A stretch of 64,000 nucleotides of DNA, taken from Paragordius varius (taxonomy: Eukaryota > Animalia > Nematomorpha). The notes under the pieces were generated by a model. The model was not told the DNA's origin. It ran no database searches and worked only from the letters and a program-made list of their open reading frames with translations. The stretch spans positions 8,308,001 to 8,372,000 of the forward strand of contig OZ176056.1 of the NCBI GenBank assembly GCA_964247055.1, in the 5' to 3' direction. The first letter of the stretch is position 1, and each line of letters starts with the position of its first letter. Made by a program: the position numbers and the translations under genes. Shown here piece by piece: positions 8,848 through 34,942 of this stretch.

Positions 8848-11800
8848 GTATCTATATTCCGTTATATTAAGGTTTTTTATTTAAAATGTAATTTTGTGTT
8901 AAAAATGGCAAATATATTTTTTAAAGCATTTTGATGTGAATTACAATATAACTAACTATTCGGTAAAAATTTATGTCATAAAATTATAAAAAAATATCAA
9001 AAAATACTTAAAAGTTTATTACCAAATATAATTTATACGTACATCTTATTTAAGATTGGGTTACAATAACCTCTCCTTGATACACAAATTTTCATGATTT
9101 AAAACAGTTTTTTTTATAAATTTCTATAAATAATCTTTATATTTATAGTATTTCTACAATTATATAAAAAAAAATTTTGTCTATGAAATAAATTGAAAAA
9201 ATAGTCAAATTTTTTGAATTTTATAAATATCTTTTGCGAATTATTCAAGATTCCAGGAAACTTCCATATATCAACTCATGCTAGTCAAGCACCACCAGAA
9301 ACTGTTAATATGCAACATATTATTCACTCTTTAACATTCGGCGATGATTTTCCGGTAATTACAAAGTTTATCAAATAAAAAAATGCTAAGTATATTTAGT
9401 TTATTCAGTAAAGATTGAAATTATAATCGAAAAAAACGTAAAAATAATTGGTAATTATTTTTTTATAAAATAACCCTAACTTGATATTTTATAACTCATA
9501 ACTTATTGATTTGAGTTTAAGAATAACGAAAAACCATATACAGTATGCATACACGGGAGTGTATTTGAAAAAAAGAAAGGAAATGATTGTTTATTCAACA
9601 TTTTATTATTTTTTTCCATACACTACTGTGGTGTAGGGCAAATTGCCCTCCTACTATAGTTTGTGAAATAAGCAACCTTAAATGTTACTGTAAATTGTTG
9701 GTAATTATTTCAAAATCCAAATCCAAATTATAAATGTCATAAAAAACCAAAGATAATAAAATTTTTGCTTTAGTGTTTTTAGTTTTGTCCTTTATAATTT
9801 ATTTTTACTGTAATTCATATATATACCATTTACAGTTCAAATTTACCCTTGAACAATTCAAATTCACCCTCGAACAATCTAAATTCACCCTAAAAATAAA
9901 TTATGTATTTTTGAACTAATATATAATTCATTATTGATATGAAATATATTTTTATGGTATAATTTATTATTATTTCAGTATTATTTTAATTTAAAACAAA
10001 GTTTTTATTTTTGAAAAATATATAAAATATAGGTAATTTTTAATCTTAAAAAACATATATTTTATTTGAGGGTGGATTTGAATTGTTCGAGGGTGAGTTT
10101 GAATTGTAAATGGTATATTTGTCAAAATTTGGAATAGAATATGCATTTTAATGGTTGCTTATTTTACGTTTTATATAGTAGGGGGCAATTTGCAACACAA
10201 CAGTAGTGTATGGAAAAAAATAACAAAATGTTGAATAATCATGATTTCCTTTGCTATTTTCCATACATTCCTGTCCTGTGTGTTGCGAATTGCCATACTA
10301 TAGTGTTAAATAAGCACAATCAGTAAAATACATCCTGTATAATTGGTTTTCATGAATATTTTATATTATATAATAAATGAGGAAATATTTAGTTTAGAAA
10401 TAGATTTCAATAAAAATTGAAATTATAACAAAATGTAAATAATATCTAAACCATTTATTTAATCTTGGATATTATATTTTTTAGTTAAATTATTACGATT
10501 TTAATTCACACAATTAAATTTGTTACCATTTACATTTTATCTATTTAACTGCAAATATTATATTTATAAATCGCAGTTAAGAAAATATGGTTAGGTTGTC
10601 TTTACAAAAAAATATTTATTTTAGTATTTTCAGGATGACCGACCCTTAATAAAAATTTTATTTAAAAAAACTTTTGTGTTTTGATATATACCATTAACAC
10701 TTCATAATTCACCCTTTAATTATTTAAATTCACCCTAAAATAAATAAATATTGTGATTTTTAAAATTAAAAATTACCTGTATTTCTGTATATTTTTAAGG
10801 AATGATATTTTGTTTAAAATGAAAATACTGAAAAATAAATAAACTAAGCCATAAAGATATATTTCATATTAATGAGAAAATACATAATTTATTTTTAGGG
10901 TAAATTTGAATTGTTCAAGGGTGAATTTGAATCGTAAATGGTATATAACATTGTCAAGGCGTATCTTATTAATAATGTGATTAAAATTTCGTAAGATTAA
11001 TTATTACACTATATTCAAAAAATTTGTTCAATAGTCGAAAATAAAAACAAAATTAATGTAAAAGAAAATGAAAATTATTAATACGAAAAAATTTTTTAAT
11101 TAATTTTTACTTTGTAATTTATTATATTTTAGCATCATGCGGTCCAAGCCCATTCCAAAGCATTGGTTAATGTTGAAAAACCCGAAGGAGGTATAAAAAT
11201 CATACGGACCCTAAAAACGATTAATTTTGTTTGATTTAATCCTGGGAATTAATATAAATAATTTATAACTCAATAAATATTAAGCACCAATATGTTTTAA
11301 GAGCGTTTTTCAAAGGTTTTTTTTACTAGTCTAAATGGAGAAAAAATGTTAAAATATAAATTTTTATTACAGTTTTTTTTGGAAATAATCCAACATAATC
11401 ATACATATTTAAATTTTATATATATACCAGTTACAATTCAAATTCACCCTTAAACAATTCAAATTCACCCTCAAAATAAAATAAATTGTGTTCCCGGGAT
11501 ATTATAACTCATTAATATGAATATATCTTAATGTCGTATAGTTTATTATTTTTTCGATATTATATAGTATTAATTTTAAAAAAAAATTTATTTTATAAAA
11601 TTATAAAAAAATGTAAGTAATTTTTAATTTTAAAAAACACTTAATATATTTTAGAGTTTGAATTGTTCAAGGTAGAATTTAAATTGTTCAAGGGAGAATT
11701 TGAATTGTTCAGGGAGAACATGAACTCTAAAAGGTATATCAATCACAAAAATTTATATATTTATATAAATATTTTTTAGAAATAGGTAAGTTTTTCATTG

Positions 11801-15689: not shown

Positions 15690-17510
15690 TTAAAACAATA
15701 TTTTTGTCATGTAGGGGCCTTCAAGTTCATAACCCAATTTACGGTAATAAGCCCGTGTCCCTACACCCGAAATAACGGCAATTTTGTTGGAGCCATGTTC
15801 GCTTTTTGCGATTCGTTCAGCTTCTTCCATAAGCAAAGTTCCTATGCCTTGGTGCTGAAATTTGGTCGGGTCTTTGGCCTGCAAGGGTACAACACTCCCA
15901 TAAACATGTAATTCCCGTACGATGCTAACTCGATCGAGTGGATAAGTAGGAGTAATAATGTGAGCGCTGTGAACGTTAGTATTAGCAAAAGTAGAAGCAT
16001 TATGATTGGCTTTAAGCTCTGGTCTGTATGCAGTAACTGGATTACATTGCCGTAACCTTAGTAATCCTATCAAAGTGTCAGTTGAGGTATCCTCATACGA
16101 TAAAAATGTTTCCCATCCCTCATTACCCACGTAGTCTCGGCGAACGAGTTCAATTTCATTTTGTTGAGCGGCATTATTTGTTGTAGTAGGGGATGATGTC
16201 ATATCCTGAATTATTAGGGCACCACTTTTATTTTCTGCATTATATTTATTGCAATTTTTTTCCTTTTCCTTATTGGCATGAATATGTCGGATTCCAGCTT
16301 CACGAGTTCTCACATCTCTGCATGTTAAACCGAGCTCTTTCATACGAGCCAAACAATGTTCCCGTAAATTCCCAGATTCGACAGCCGAGGAGGAAACGAG
16401 GGGCATGGGTATGTCTCTTTGTACACGATAAACTCGTACCCAAGGTGGTATTAGCGCTAAAATTTTGGATACCAAATCAATGAGTACACTGGGTGGGTAA
16501 CTTTTATACCGTCCCGTTTTCCATAATTCATATAATCCGGTACCGCGAATAACGAGCGTAGGATAAATTTTAAGGCCATCGGGCCTAAAGCTGGGATCCT
16601 CAAACAGTTGAATGAATTGCGACAAGTCACGTCGATACCCCATGTTAGGAAGGTCGGGCATCATATGCGTCACAACTTTGTAACCGGCTTCCTTGGCCAA
16701 CACAAACGTTTGACATGTGGCAGAAACTGTGTGCCCACGATTCGTGTCTAAGGCAATGTCTTCGTAAACACTTTGAACTCCAATCTCCAAACGGGTGCAT
16801 CCATAACTCAGCATATCATTTATGTGCCGTTCATAACAGTAATCGGGACGTGTTTCAATCGTTATACCGATACATTTCATGCGTGAGCGTTCAGACATGA
16901 GGACGGCTTCGCGGACCGAATTACTCCGAGCCCCGGAAAGTGCATCATGCAAGTTACGGATAAAAAAATCGCGATAATCTTCGGGAAGTGACATGAATGT
17001 CCCACCCATAATTATATATTCAATCTTTTCCACATCGTGTCCCAGTTGTTGTAATTGAGAAATCCGATGACGCGCTTGAATATAGGGATCATAACGTGCT
17101 CGTATAGCACGCATTGAAGTAGGTTCATACCCCGTGTAAGATTGTGTCGAATATTCGAAATCTGAATCGGGTCCGCCCGGGCAGTAAACACAAACGTTTC
17201 CAGTAGTTGCTATGTGAGGACATCTATGCGGTTTACACATGACTGCGACAACAGCAATTCCACTTGCTGTACGGACCGGTTTAGCCTTCAAAACAGGAAT
17301 GAGAATGCTTTTGGATTCATTTGGAATGGCATTTATTATATCAAACAGTTTGGGTTGATTTGAGAGTTTATATTTGTTTGATGAAGCAGATTTAATTTTC
17401 GTAAGGTTAAATGTTTTACCCGATTGAACATGGGATAAAACAGTTTTAATAATGTCACCAACGCACAAGGAATAGTTTTTATGATTAAGCGTGTCGGTAT
17501 CGATAGTCAT
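15690..17510 (-). CDS. ELP3: Elongator complex protein 3 (radical SAM + KAT domains), 606 aa, single exon
   Basis: Long ORF with [22 protein letters not shown] (Fe-S cysteines), [31 protein letters not shown] and [15 protein letters not shown]. Confidence 0.99.
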
Positions 17511-31713: not shown

Positions 31714-33893
31714 TTAATGGATGCTGGTTAAATTTTCTTTACTATTTACATCGTTTAATGTATTATTATAATTATTGATATTTTTGTTGTAATTGGTTTT
31801 TTCATCACCATTTTGCATATCATTGTTGGATTGTTCAGGGTATGTTAGGGAGTATATTGATATTTCAAGCTAGAATATTGAATAAAATAATAAATGTGAT
31901 ATAAATATATTTCTAATAAACTCTCAATTATCTTTTGGAATAGTTTTATATCCCAACGTGTTAAAATTTAAATATTTTAAAAAAATTTAAGTTATTAAGA
32001 CGATTTTAATAAATATGCTTCATTAGAGTTTTGGCATTATAAATTTTTTTAAAAAATTTTAAAATAGTAAAAAAATCTTCATCTTAAACTCTTTTTGCCG
32101 CCATTTTTTACTTAATTTTTTTTAAAATCGCTATTGCAACAGACGATTAAATGTATATTATGGTTAGAAAATGTAAATAATTAGCCTTATAAAGCTTTCA
32201 TACTACATTTTACGATCAAAAACTTAATATATTTCGATTTTAATATCAGCTGTTCGTTTCAATCGTGTTTTGGGCGGAACTCTCTCAATTTTAAACTCTA
32301 AAAGTCACAAAACTGTAAAATTAAGCTTTATATTTGAGAAATGAAAAATTTTTGATAATTAAATTTTAACTAAATTAACTTTCAAAACTGTACTTTAATC
32401 TAAATGTGCTCAGGGATATAAAATTACCCCAAAAAGTAAACTAGGACAAAAAAGTGAAAAGGTATGTATCCTTAATATTAAACATATATGGTTTTTTATA
32501 GTTTAATTTTAAGGTTTTATAATTGACACACATAAGTAACAATTTAAGATATATATATAATTGAAAATAAAAACATATTCTTAAAACCATTTTTCATAAA
32601 ATCAAAAACAACCTATCTATAACATGAAAAATGATACCAGAATCAAATGAAAATTTATGTTCTTGGATCAGTTGTACTTAAATCGCGCGGGTATAAAAGT
32701 ACTTTTTTATAGCCCTAAAATAAGTATTAAATATTTTGCACTGTATTTATACAAAGTTAGTATAAATATTTGCAAATGTATCAAACAGTTATGAAATTGT
32801 TAACGGTATTATATGGGACATGACCCCTAATAAAGCAAGATATACATTTTTGGCAGATGTTTAAAATTTTTTGATAAGCACTTACTGTTTTAGATAATTT
32901 AATTCATGCTAAGTTTAGGTCTAATAAGATATTTAATTAATACGGACAAATGTAAAAAATTTAGAAGAAAAATAATTCTTTTTTTAAATTTTAAATTGTT
33001 TTTGGTCCACTCTAAGGGATCCAAAATAACCATTTTGTAGAAAGGGTTAATTCAAAAACTAGAACCTTATTTAAGAATCGAAAAAGTGAATGTTATCAAC
33101 ATTTGCTAATTAATTTATAAGCACTGGTAATTGCAAAATAAGAGGATCCACTGTATAAAAACAATCAATGAAAAAGTCAAAATGTAAAAATTTTATAATA
33201 AATATTCTTTTAAATAGCCATATTTTAAAAAACCTTAAAAAGATAACCTGAAAATAAAATTGTGAATATGTATATATTGAGTGTATCACAATTATACATC
33301 TCTATTTTTTGAACCGAAACTCATAGGTTGCAAAAAATTAAAATTTTAAAAAGTATGAATATTTAATATCACGTAATACATTAAAAAGTAATAACATAAA
33401 ACTTACCACACGGAGACCCTTTTCAAGAGGATCGGTGAGATAAAGTCCACGAGGCATATAGACTGAGTAATTTTGTTCTTGAATGTAAGATCGAATTTTC
33501 TTAAGATACTTTTTAAAAAGAAAAAAATATTAAAAAAAGAAATAATTTATCGTTATTCAGTTTTTGTGATGAAAATATATCATATATGCATAAAAAAGAG
33601 CAAACTTTTTCACAACGTGTATCCACACAAAGGTATGATAAATAAGCCGTCATACAACCGAGTAATCCTTCCAAAAATGTTTCACAATTACATTTATCAG
33701 CTTCTTTATACATTTCATTTAGAGTATTGATAGTGTTTATATACACATTGCGCTCAATCTATACAATAAAGTAACTTATTGGCAATACCCTATCTTCTAA
33801 TTCCTTGGGAAAATTGGTTGAAAATTTGCAAACGGTGCCTTCTTGATAATCTCTTTGAACATAGATATGATTCACTTTGAGAATTGGTTCCAT
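31714..33893 (-). CDS. GOLGA7: Golgin A7 / Erf4 (DHHC palmitoyltransferase cofactor), 171 aa, 4 exons
   Basis: Exons (minus): 33789-33893, 33606-33758, 33407-33508, 31714-31869 (516 nt). Translation IYVQRDYQEGTVCKFSTNFPKELEDRI...FLEGLLGCMTAYL...YIQEQN...[22 protein letters not shown] matches GOLGA7 as I recall it. Confidence 0.93.
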
Positions 33894-34003
33894 ATGGACA
33901 TTTTTCGTTGTCAGGTTTACCACATGTTTTTGGTTTAGTGGAAATTTTATAGGCTGCGAAAAAAATTGAATTGCAAAGTTTTGCGTTTCTACCGGTATAT
34001 TAT
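33894..34003. promoter_or_regulatory. Putative bidirectional promoter / 5' leader region, GOLGA7-Salvador
   Basis: Only 110 bp separate the two divergent ATGs. Confidence 0.6.
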
Positions 34004-34942
34004 ATGACTTCTTGGAAAAAGACTAAGCAAAAAACTGAAAATTTGATCGGAGTATACAGTAAAAAAACAACCAACACATCACTTAAACGCGATGACAATA
34101 ATACGGCATTCAGAGATTATAAAATTAAAAGTCGCGAAAATATTAATCAATTACACAATAACAACCACCATACAAAGTCGCAGCAAATAACTCCAACTAA
34201 TTTAACATCCACTTATTCAACAAAGGTTAAACCATCCTTTAAATCATACATTTATGATTTTTTAAAACGAAAAAAATCTATCGAACTTACCATTTCTGAT
34301 CCAAATCCTAATAATTCAAATCACTTGGCTATACTGCCCCATAAAAAACATTCTGTTACAGCACAAAACATTAAACCCAAAAATTTTGTCACCATAAACA
34401 ATAATTCTCCTGTGAATACTTCCCCTCTGGTTCCAGCAAATCCATTCTTGAATGCTAAAATCCCTGATTGGCTTATTACATATTCCACGTCCCTACCAAC
34501 AACACTTGAACCCAATTCTGAATTAAATTGGAACCGTTTTGAGATGGGTCAGTTGGAAACGTTTGAAGCTATACTTAAACGATTATTTATGCTGGAGCTA
34601 GAAAAAATTGTTATGAAATATGAAGCATTTCGCTTATGCCTAGCCCATAAACTTGAAGAATACATTTACAAACATAGGGCGGTAACATCAAATAAATGTT
34701 TTGTCACCCAATCATCACCTTACCACAAAACATCACAACAAATTGTGCCCAAAACTCAAGAACGATACAATGTTTCAAATATCTCTAATCTCATCTCAAT
34801 AGATTCTGGCATAAAAAATTCGGGGGCATTTAAATATTCTTTCCCGAATTTGAGGCAACAACATCAATATTATGTGTTAAATAAAAGTGATAAAAACTCA
34901 AACATATATTACTCACAAAATATGTATATATCCAATTTATAA
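34004..34942 (+). CDS. SAV1: Salvador (SAV1/WW45) homologue with SARAH domain but no WW domains, 312 aa, single exon
   Basis: From ATG 34004: MTSWKKTKQK..IGVYSKKT resembles the SAV1 N-terminus (MLSRKKTK..GKYVKKET). ANPFLNAKIPDWL and LNWNRFEMGQLETFEAILKRLFMLELEKIVMKYEAFRLCL match the SAV1 pre-SARAH segment and SARAH helix. Confidence 0.85.
   Translation: MTSWKKTKQKTENLIGVYSKKTTNTSLKRDDNNTAFRDYKIKSRENINQLHNNNHHTKSQQITPTNLTSTYSTKVKPSFKSYIYDFLKRKKSIELTISDPNPNNSNHLAILPHKKHSVTAQNIKPKNFVTINNNSPVNTSPLVPANPFLNAKIPDWLITYSTSLPTTLEPNSELNWNRFEMGQLETFEAILKRLFMLELEKIVMKYEAFRLCLAHKLEEYIYKHRAVTSNKCFVTQSSPYHKTSQQIVPKTQERYNVSNISNLISIDSGIKNSGAFKYSFPNLRQQHQYYVLNKSDKNSNIYYSQNMYISNL

What the first reader, a model, noticed from the sequence alone, without database searches (positions are those of the whole stretch)
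34004..34942. Salvador homologue that has lost both WW domains
Seen: one continuous reading frame runs from a SAV1-like N-terminus (KKTK..GVYSKK) to ANP..IPDWL and the SARAH helix. There is no tryptophan at all in the intervening region (residues 5 to about 155), so WW exons cannot simply have been missed. Known: animal Salvador carries WW domain(s) here that bind PPxY partners such as Warts/LATS, while SARAH binds Hippo/MST. Inference: a rewired Hippo scaffold that can still bind Hippo, and possibly Merlin via the N-terminal motif, but not PPxY ligands. It also has an extra low-complexity C-terminal tail of about 90 aa.
Basis: partly seen in the sequence, partly recalled or inferred. Interest (0 to 1): 0.75.

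Follow-up and report, generated by a model that had tools for sequence, protein, structure and literature searches.

The report
Salvador gene without WW domains
This intron-less gene encodes a real Salvador (Hippo-pathway adaptor) that keeps its N-terminal motif and Hippo-binding SARAH helix but has lost both WW domains; a horsehair-worm relative shows the same loss, and jellyfish/Hydra and a mite lost them independently, so it is a natural deletion variant rather than a unique oddity.

Summary
Window 34004-34942 (+) is one 312-codon frame. It has a Salvador-type N-terminal motif, about 120 disordered residues with no tryptophan, a Salvador-type extended SARAH region (human SAV1 6ao5_B, E 3.8e-15) and an unconserved 83-residue tail. 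Pfam, a Salvador-specific WW1-WW2 profile and a six-frame scan of the window find no WW.

The only close relative is a Gordionus (Nematomorpha) protein, P0001. It has the same architecture and is also single-exon, so the loss is old and the gene has been kept. RASSF is excluded.

I could not test two things. A WW-bearing paralogue elsewhere in this genome is also open, although searches of public proteins found none from Gordionus.

Loss of WW from Salvador is not unique. Medusozoan Salvador lacks WW, including the cDNA-cloned Hydra SAV, and so does that of the mite Halotydeus. These are separate clades, and no paper I found comments on it.

Best reading: a minimal Salvador that pairs with Hippo through SARAH and keeps the N-terminal FERM-binding/phosphatase-inhibiting motif, but cannot bind PPxY partners or dimerise through WW2. 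It is a new variant of a known kind, of moderate interest.

The parts
34004..34942 (+). Complete single-exon coding sequence of the WW-less Salvador orthologue (312 aa plus stop)
   Evidence: Continuous ORF. The only close relative is Gordionus P0001, E 1.5e-21. ORF GC is 0.318 against 0.242 in the flanks, and the other forward frames are full of stops.
34004..34066 (+). N-terminal basic Salvador motif (residues 1-21, MTSWKKTK..GVYSKK). It corresponds to the FERM-binding motif / start of the phosphatase-inhibitory region of human SAV1.
   Evidence: Aligns with the N-termini of 60+ Salvador proteins and with Gordionus MNPWKKNK..GRYIKK. The function of the human region is taken from PMC5663475.
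34067..34423 (+). Linker of about 120 residues that stands where WW1-WW2 lie in canonical Salvador. It is disordered and low-complexity, with no Trp, no PPxY and no WW.
   Evidence: No Pfam hit. The WW1-WW2 HMM gives noise only. AF2 pLDDT is below 55 with no secondary structure. No PPxY.
34223..34285 (+). Short motif shared only with the Gordionus orthologue (residues 74-94, KPSFKSYIYDFLKRKK against KISFKAYFMDYIIRRKK); role unknown
   Evidence: Local alignment and a two-sequence HMM. Similarity across the whole linker is marginal: 21 of 500 shuffles reach it.
34424..34690 (+). Salvador-type extended SARAH region (residues 141-229): PLVPANP, two short helices (IPDWL..), then one long helix
   Evidence: 6ao5_B E 3.8e-15 and 6bn1_B 4e-5. 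The profile search returns Salvadors. AF2 helices at 155-162, 169-172 and 181-229, pLDDT 80-96. Foldseek top hit is 6bn1_B, TM 0.88 by target, rmsd 1.1 A.
34691..34939 (+). C-terminal low-complexity tail (residues 230-312), not conserved
   Evidence: AF2 pLDDT mostly below 50. No similarity to the Gordionus tail: 417 of 500 shuffles score as high.

Best explanation
This is the Salvador (Sav/SAV1) orthologue of a nematomorph-like, very AT-rich animal genome. It has been reduced to the two ends of the ancestral protein. The N-terminal basic motif is kept; in human SAV1 it binds Merlin-type FERM domains and starts the region that inhibits STRIPAK-PP2A. The extended SARAH region, which pairs with the SARAH helix of the Hippo/MST kinase, is also kept. 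The tandem WW domains between them were lost before this species and Gordionus diverged, and a disordered linker took their place.

Inferred mechanism: the protein still forms a 1:1 SARAH heterodimer with Hippo, competes with RASSF and brings its N-terminal motif to the kinase complex. It cannot dock PPxY partners such as Warts/LATS, and it cannot form the WW2-mediated Sav2-Hippo2 heterotetramer. Warts would then have to be recruited by other routes.

Shown: architecture, orthology, conservation in a second species, absence of WW. Inferred: all binding properties and expression.
For: - Salvador identity. Human SAV1 SARAH scores E 3.8e-15 and fly Sav 4e-5, against 0.04 for RASSF5. A profile of the SARAH region, run against 1.84 billion representatives, returns Salvador proteins: 130 at E<=1e-10. 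The best canonical one is Priapulus caudatus Salvador, P0002, which has two WW. The N-terminal motif aligns with the family. The AF2 model has the H0/H1 plus long-helix layout described for SAV1, and its best fold match is fly Salvador SARAH 6bn1_B.
- No WW. Pfam finds nothing. The Salvador-specific WW1-WW2 HMM finds nothing in the protein or in six frames of the window. There is no Trp between residues 5 and 155. AF2 shows no folded domain in the linker.
- Conserved and old. Gordionus P0001 (356 aa) has the same N-terminal motif, no WW and a SARAH region 61% identical, with only 38% identity in the main BLAST alignment. It is also single-exon, with no WW exon within 10 kb. The two are sisters in the SARAH tree.
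- Hippo interface. Seven human SAV1 residues abolish MST2 binding when mutated: E346, I350, Y357, R358, L361, L365, R368. Five are identical here (E198, I202, R210, L213, L217), one is conservative (F209) and one is changed (Y220), mapped on the alignment.
- Precedent that such proteins are used. Hydra SAV, cloned from cDNA and detected by in situ hybridisation (PMC8526868), also lacks WW.
Against: - No expression data.
- The rest of this genome could not be searched, so a WW-bearing paralogue or a separate WW-only gene is not excluded.
- In human cells WW2 and the other domains are all needed for MST2 activation (PMC5663475), so a WW-less Sav might work differently or weakly.
- The residue equivalent to R368 is Tyr.
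- The SARAH tree has 82 columns and most deep forks are unresolved.
- The presence of Hippo, Warts and Merlin in this genome was not checked.
Confidence: 0.7

Rival explanations
1. It is an old, functional retrogene or paralogue that coexists with a canonical WW-bearing Salvador elsewhere in the genome. It would act as a WW-less competitor for Hippo's SARAH domain, much as RASSF does.
For: The gene is single-exon in both species, whereas Salvador genes elsewhere usually have introns. The whole genome could not be searched. An earlier unchecked note reports a double-WW gene in this genome.
Against: The exhaustive profile search gave only one hit at E<=1e-30, Gordionus P0001. Every other listed hit with an AT-rich-type composition whose source I looked up, 14 of the 16 ranked just below P0001, comes from unnamed ENA, Logan or JGI assemblies or is the Hydra protein; two short fragments (P0101 aside, P0154 and P0089-type entries) were not all name-checked, and none looked up comes from the annotated Gordionus genome. 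A word search with an AT-rich canonical Salvador (P0126) listed no nematomorph protein among the 120 rows shown, out of 195 hits. Another conserved gene in the window, ELP3, is also intron-less, so lack of introns is not diagnostic. The full N-terminal motif is kept.
Confidence: 0.12
2. The WW module was not lost but split off. A separate gene would encode the WW pair and work in trans with this N-motif + SARAH protein (gene fission).
Against: Many unrelated conserved proteins have two WW domains (general knowledge; for example the splicing factor PRPF40 and WWOX). Nothing links that gene to Salvador. No Salvador-type WW lies within the window or within 10 kb of the Gordionus gene.
Confidence: 0.04
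3. It is a decaying or silent gene remnant (processed pseudogene) whose open frame has survived so far.
For: No RNA evidence. The linker and tail are low-complexity and fast-evolving. Nematomorph genomes have lost many conserved genes: BUSCO is 71.6% in Gordionus.
Against: A 312-codon frame in 24% GC DNA, where the other frames carry 17-37 stops, cannot persist without selection over the divergence seen (38% identity to Gordionus). Conservation is concentrated in the two functional ends: 61% identity in SARAH plus the N-terminal motif. That is the signature of purifying selection.
Confidence: 0.05
4. It is a RASSF-type or other SARAH protein and not Salvador.
For: Weak SARAH similarity to RASSF5, E 0.04-0.17.
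Against: The score to SAV1 is 13 orders of magnitude better. The pre-SARAH extension and the N-terminal motif are Salvador-specific. No RA or C1 domain. The best fold match is Salvador 6bn1_B.
Confidence: 0.01

Closest known systems
Human SAV1 (WW45) and Drosophila Salvador
   Same: N-terminal basic FERM-binding motif; extended SARAH region with the PANP..IPxWL lead-in; 5 of 7 MST2-contact residues identical.
   Different: No WW1 or WW2. It therefore has no PPxY docking site for Warts/LATS and no WW2 homodimerisation, both described for the human protein in PMC5663475. It is shorter in the middle, intron-less, and has an unconserved 83-aa tail.
Gordionus sp. (Nematomorpha) unnamed protein P0001, GCA_954871325.2
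   Same: Same architecture (N-motif, WW-less linker, SARAH, tail); single exon; 61% identity in SARAH; a shared mid-linker motif.
   Different: Only 38% identical in the main alignment. Linker and tail are not alignable. No shared neighbouring genes detected. The Gordionus gene lies inside an EnY2 gene model.
Medusozoan Salvador (Hydra vulgaris SAV UDP68766.1 = P0101/P0154; Hydractinia P0122; Sanderia P0085)
   Same: Salvador orthologues with the N-terminal motif and SARAH but no detectable WW. The Hydra gene is expressed and was cloned from cDNA (PMC8526868).
   Different: A separate, strongly supported clade, so the loss was independent. The linkers are longer (about 380-450 aa) and carry a conserved PPPY motif that the nematomorph proteins lack.
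Halotydeus destructor (mite) 'Protein salvador-like protein 1' P0038
   Same: Canonical N-terminus and SARAH, no WW. The gene spans 1355 bp for 414 aa and is tightly flanked by other genes, so there is no room for missed WW exons.
   Different: It belongs to a third clade, with relatives that keep degenerate WW domains. Its genome composition is ordinary (GC 0.44).
RASSF1-6 / dRASSF
   Same: A SARAH helix that pairs with Hippo/MST and no WW domains. Functionally, a WW-less Salvador may resemble a SARAH-only competitor.
   Different: No RA domain, much weaker SARAH similarity, and it has the Salvador-specific extension and N-terminal motif.

Membership tests
Salvador / SAV1 (WW45) | C-terminal SARAH domain of the Salvador type, with the N-terminal extension (H0/H1; PANP..IPxWL) | tested here: met
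   6ao5_B E 3.8e-15 and 6bn1_B 4e-5. The profile search returns Salvadors. AF2 helices at 155-162, 169-172 and 181-229. Foldseek top hit 6bn1_B, TM 0.88 by target.
Salvador / SAV1 (WW45) | Two tandem WW domains between the N-terminal region and SARAH (used as the identifying feature in PMC7035326) | tested here: not met
   Pfam finds nothing at E<=10. The Salvador WW1-WW2 HMM gives noise only. No Trp at residues 5-155. No WW exon in six frames of the window. No folded linker domain.
Salvador / SAV1 (WW45) | N-terminal basic motif (M-L-S-x-K-K ... G-K-Y-V-K-K), the FERM-binding motif region | tested here: met
   Aligns with 60+ family N-termini. The functional assignment comes from PMC5663475.
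Salvador / SAV1 (WW45) | Descent: groups with Salvador orthologues and not with other SARAH proteins | tested here: met
   All name-checked, and by motif nearly all, of the 150 best profile hits are Salvadors. It is sister to Gordionus P0001. The RASSF5 score is 13 orders of magnitude weaker. Deep tree forks are unresolved, and no RASSF/MST outgroup sequences were available for the tree.
Salvador / SAV1 (WW45) | Binds the Hippo/MST SARAH domain | not testable with these tools
   Indirect only: 5 of 7 critical contact residues are identical, 1 is conservative and 1 is changed.
Salvador / SAV1 (WW45) | Single copy per genome (no paralogues reported from fly to human, PMC7035326) | tested here: inconclusive
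   No second nematomorph hit in public proteins. The rest of this genome could not be searched.
RASSF | Ras-association (RA) domain upstream of SARAH | tested here: not met
   No Pfam family at E<=10.
Processed pseudogene / retrocopy | Disabled frame, no conservation, parent gene elsewhere | tested here: not met
   The frame is intact, and the same architecture is kept in Gordionus. Lack of introns is shared with ELP3 in this window. The existence of a parent gene was not testable.

The most novel reading that the evidence does not exclude
Salvador has shed its WW domains at least three times independently: in Nematomorpha, in Medusozoa and in an acariform mite. Each time it kept the N-terminal motif and SARAH. 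This would mean that the conserved, indispensable core of Salvador is 'N-terminal FERM-binding/PP2A-inhibiting motif tethered to Hippo by SARAH'. The textbook role of bridging Hippo to Warts through WW-PPxY contacts would then be an accessory that whole phyla do without. In medusozoans it may even be inverted, because their Salvador carries a PPPY motif instead of WW.
Probability: 0.3. Interest if true: 0.6.

Novelty: new variant of a known kind. Interest (0 to 1): 0.45.

Why it matters
Salvador is a core tumour-suppressor adaptor of the Hippo growth-control pathway. Its WW domains are part of its textbook definition ('WW45') and of its proposed mechanism: docking Warts/LATS and forming the Sav-Hippo heterotetramer. 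Natural orthologues that keep only the N-terminal motif and SARAH, maintained across divergent nematomorphs and arising independently in other lineages, are ready-made 'delta-WW' experiments. They allow a direct test of which Salvador functions are essential (STRIPAK antagonism and Hippo stabilisation against Warts scaffolding). They also allow a test of whether partners co-evolve: PPxY motifs of Warts, and WW domains of Yorkie, which an unchecked note says are also eroded here. In practice, surveys that identify Salvador by its WW domains will score it as lost in these phyla.

Tried and rejected
Expression, transcript ends and splicing are therefore untested.
2. Synteny with the Gordionus locus. 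tblastn of all L001 ORFs against the window found only the Salvador gene itself.
3. Taxonomic yardstick. The ELP3 search gave about 67% identity to spiders, birds and molluscs alike and listed no close relative, so it was uninformative.
4. A WW relic in the linker. The motif shared with Gordionus (residues 74-94) gives only noise-level hits (E>5), some of them on WW strands of other Salvadors. AF2 predicts no structure there. I rejected it as evidence of a relic.
5. Conservation of the C-terminal tail: none.
6. Very short introns inside the ORF, prompted by earlier notes of 22-24-nt introns in this genome. There are three GT..AG candidates of 18-32 nt. Two lie in conserved SARAH codons, and the third (34772-34802, in the tail) cannot be judged without RNA.
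7. AT-rich canonical Salvadors (P0126, P0037, P0021, P0142) were checked as possible nematomorph paralogues. They come from unnamed environmental or Logan assemblies with compact, gene-dense contigs. Their accessions differ from the three nematomorph transcriptomes named in the Gordionus preprint. Nothing ties them to Nematomorpha, but their organisms remain unknown.
8. The bacterial promoter/terminator scan is irrelevant for a eukaryotic locus.
9. Literature. No paper in the library combines Nematomorpha with Hippo or Salvador. None found states that a Salvador lacks WW.

Full report
**What is there**

Window 34004-34942 (+) is one open frame of 312 codons. The DNA around it is about 24% G+C. 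Stop codons are therefore frequent: the other two forward frames of the same stretch contain 17 and 37 stops. The ORF is richer in G+C (0.318) than its flanks (0.242). Only six ORFs of 110 aa or more exist in the whole 64 kb. The frame is not a chance product.

**Identity**

Pfam recognises nothing in the protein, even at E<=10. A sequence search of solved structures matches residues 141-219 as follows:

| Target | E-value |
|---|---|
| Human SAV1 SARAH fragment 6ao5_B | 3.8e-15 |
| Drosophila Salvador SARAH 6bn1_B | 4e-5 |
| RASSF5 SARAH | 0.04-0.17 |

The match includes the lead-in PLVPANPF..KIPDWL, which precedes the SARAH helix only in Salvador.

The first 21 residues (MTSWKKTK..GVYSKK) align with the N-termini of more than 60 Salvador proteins, consensus MLSxKK..G.GKYVKK. 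In human SAV1 this region holds the FERM-binding motif and begins the phosphatase-inhibitory domain (PMC5663475).

An AlphaFold2 model built on a 35-sequence alignment folds only residues of about 140-230. It shows two short helices (155-162 and 169-172) and one long helix (181-229) at pLDDT 80-96. This is the H0/H1-plus-coiled-coil layout described for SAV1. Its best structural match in the PDB is fly Salvador SARAH 6bn1_B, with TM 0.88 by target and rmsd 1.1 A over 69 columns. RASSF is excluded.

**Absence of WW**

- Tryptophans occur only at residues 4, 156 and 176.
- I built a 73-position HMM of the WW1-WW2 module from 68 canonical Salvador hits. It scores canonical proteins at 1e-36 to 1e-46 and gives only negative-score noise on this protein.
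- AF2 shows no cryptic folded domain in residues 22-140.
- The linker has no PPxY motif.

**Relatives and age of the loss**

The word search found a single homologue, P0001, an unnamed protein of Gordionus sp. (Nematomorpha). It is 356 aa long and begins MNPWKKNK..GRYIKK. Its only tryptophans are at 4, 212 and 229. It has no WW by Pfam or by my HMM. Its SARAH region is 61% identical to the window's, while identity in the main BLAST alignment is only 38%. Its gene is also a single exon, and no Salvador-type WW exon lies within 10 kb on either side.

A profile of the two SARAH regions was run against 1.84 billion representative proteins. It gave 270 hits at E<=1e-3 and 130 at E<=1e-10, but only P0001 at E<=1e-30. 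The best canonical hit, P0002, is Priapulus caudatus Salvador, which has two WW domains. The ecdysozoan ancestor therefore had them, and the nematomorph state is a loss.

The two WW-less proteins are sisters in a tree of the SARAH region, which is poorly resolved at 82 columns. Conservation is concentrated at the two functional ends. The linker is only marginally similar and the tails not at all. That pattern indicates purifying selection on a working gene, not a decaying copy.

Lack of introns is not a sign of a retrocopy here. The complete ELP3 gene in the same window (15690-17510, minus strand) is also one exon. The genome's G+C matches that reported for Gordionus (26.9%), whose BUSCO completeness of 71.6% reflects widespread gene loss in the phylum.

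**Is there a canonical copy elsewhere?**

I could not search the rest of this genome. Indirect evidence is negative.

- Among the 150 best profile hits, every one of the AT-rich-type hits whose source I looked up (14 of the 16 ranked just below P0001 by composition) comes from unnamed ENA, Logan or JGI assemblies or is the Hydra protein. None comes from the annotated Gordionus genome.
- A word search seeded with an AT-rich canonical Salvador (P0126) returned 195 hits and showed the best 120. No nematomorph protein was among the rows shown.
- The AT-rich canonical Salvadors (P0126, P0037, P0021, P0142) sit on compact, gene-dense contigs unlike this window. Their accessions differ from the nematomorph transcriptomes named in the Gordionus preprint. 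Their organisms are unknown.

I put a coexisting canonical paralogue at about 0.12. Two earlier notes (unchecked) report 22-24-nt introns in this genome, one of them in a 'conserved double-WW gene'. I therefore looked for very short introns in the ORF. Two of the three GT..AG candidates lie in conserved SARAH codons, and the third is in the tail. A fission of Salvador into a WW gene and this gene remains a remote possibility.

**Expression**

Not tested. 

**Precedents found on the way**

Of 103 profile hits of 240 aa or more, the ones without a WW module are:

- the two nematomorph proteins;
- a medusozoan group: Hydra vulgaris P0101/P0154 'SAV protein', Hydractinia P0122, the scyphozoan Sanderia P0085, and the unnamed P0090 and P0097;
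- the mite Halotydeus destructor, P0038.

The Hydra protein was cloned from cDNA and detected by in situ hybridisation. The paper lists only its SARAH domain and describes domain organisation as conserved (PMC8526868).

The medusozoan proteins form their own strongly supported clade (aLRT 99), and the mite falls in a third (aLRT 98). The losses are therefore independent. The medusozoan proteins carry a conserved PPPY motif in the linker, which the nematomorph proteins lack. The mite gene spans 1355 bp for 414 aa and is tightly flanked by other genes, so no WW exons were missed. All of these proteins keep the N-terminal motif and SARAH. I found no paper that points out a WW-less Salvador. One survey used 'two WW domains' as the criterion for identifying Salvador (PMC7035326).

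**Likely mechanism (inferred)**

Seven human SAV1 residues abolish MST2 binding when mutated: E346, I350, Y357, R358, L361, L365 and R368. On the alignment they map as follows:

| Human SAV1 | This protein | Status |
|---|---|---|
| E346 | E198 | identical |
| I350 | I202 | identical |
| Y357 | F209 | conservative |
| R358 | R210 | identical |
| L361 | L213 | identical |
| L365 | L217 | identical |
| R368 | Y220 | changed |

The protein should therefore still form a SARAH heterodimer with Hippo and compete with RASSF.

In the human protein, WW2 homodimerises to give a Sav2-MST2 heterotetramer, and the WW domains bind the PPxY motifs of LATS. The N-terminal 90 residues, FERM-binding motif included, bind and inhibit the PP2A core of STRIPAK. 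A WW-less Salvador would keep the last function and lose the first two. It would act as a tether that brings the N-terminal motif to Hippo, leaving Warts recruitment to other routes.

That would fit a general thinning of the WW-PPxY network, but I did not test it.

**Verdict**

- The functional consequences, expression and single-copy status remain open.
- The case is a new variant of a known protein family. The recurrence is itself the more interesting point.

Noticed in passing
P0101/P0154 (Hydra vulgaris), P0122 (Hydractinia), P0085 (Sanderia), P0090, P0097: Medusozoan Salvador orthologues have no WW domains. They share a conserved PPPY motif (NYRxPPPY) in a long linker. The Hydra paper that cloned the gene does not remark on this.
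   Followed up: partly
L002:4001-5355 (Halotydeus destructor, P0038): A mite Salvador with a canonical N-terminus and SARAH but no WW. The 1355-bp gene is tightly flanked by other genes. Its relatives in the same clade (P0116, P0127, P0137) keep degenerate WW domains.
   Followed up: partly
window 33759-33923 (-): An exon-like ORF with a GOLGA7/ERF4-family match (Pfam PF10256, E 1.2e-5, below the gathering score). It lies head-to-head with the Salvador start codon, about 80 bp away, which suggests a shared bidirectional promoter region.
   Followed up: partly
window 15690-17510 (-): A complete, intron-less ELP3 gene (606 aa; ELP3_N, radical SAM and GNAT domains). It sits in a local G+C peak (0.37) and is about 67% identical to ELP3 of very different bilaterians, with no close relative listed.
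   Followed up: partly
L001:9770-14075 (Gordionus): The Gordionus Salvador gene (10001-11071) lies inside the span of an annotated EnY2 gene model on the same strand. This is either a nested gene or a mis-joined model. No EnY2 was detected in the window.
   Followed up: no
ENA contigs of P0037 (no DNA held); P0286: In an unnamed AT-rich organism with compact, intron-poor contigs, two Salvador-like genes (321 aa and 302 aa, both with WW) lie in tandem about 800 bp apart. This would be a Salvador duplication, whereas no Salvador paralogues are reported from fly to human (PMC7035326).
   Followed up: no
I left them out of all later searches.
   Followed up: no
window 34772-34802 (+): A 31-nt GT..AG interval in the unconserved tail. 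If it is one of this genome's very short introns, the frame would shift and the tail would be shorter. RNA data are needed to decide.
   Followed up: no
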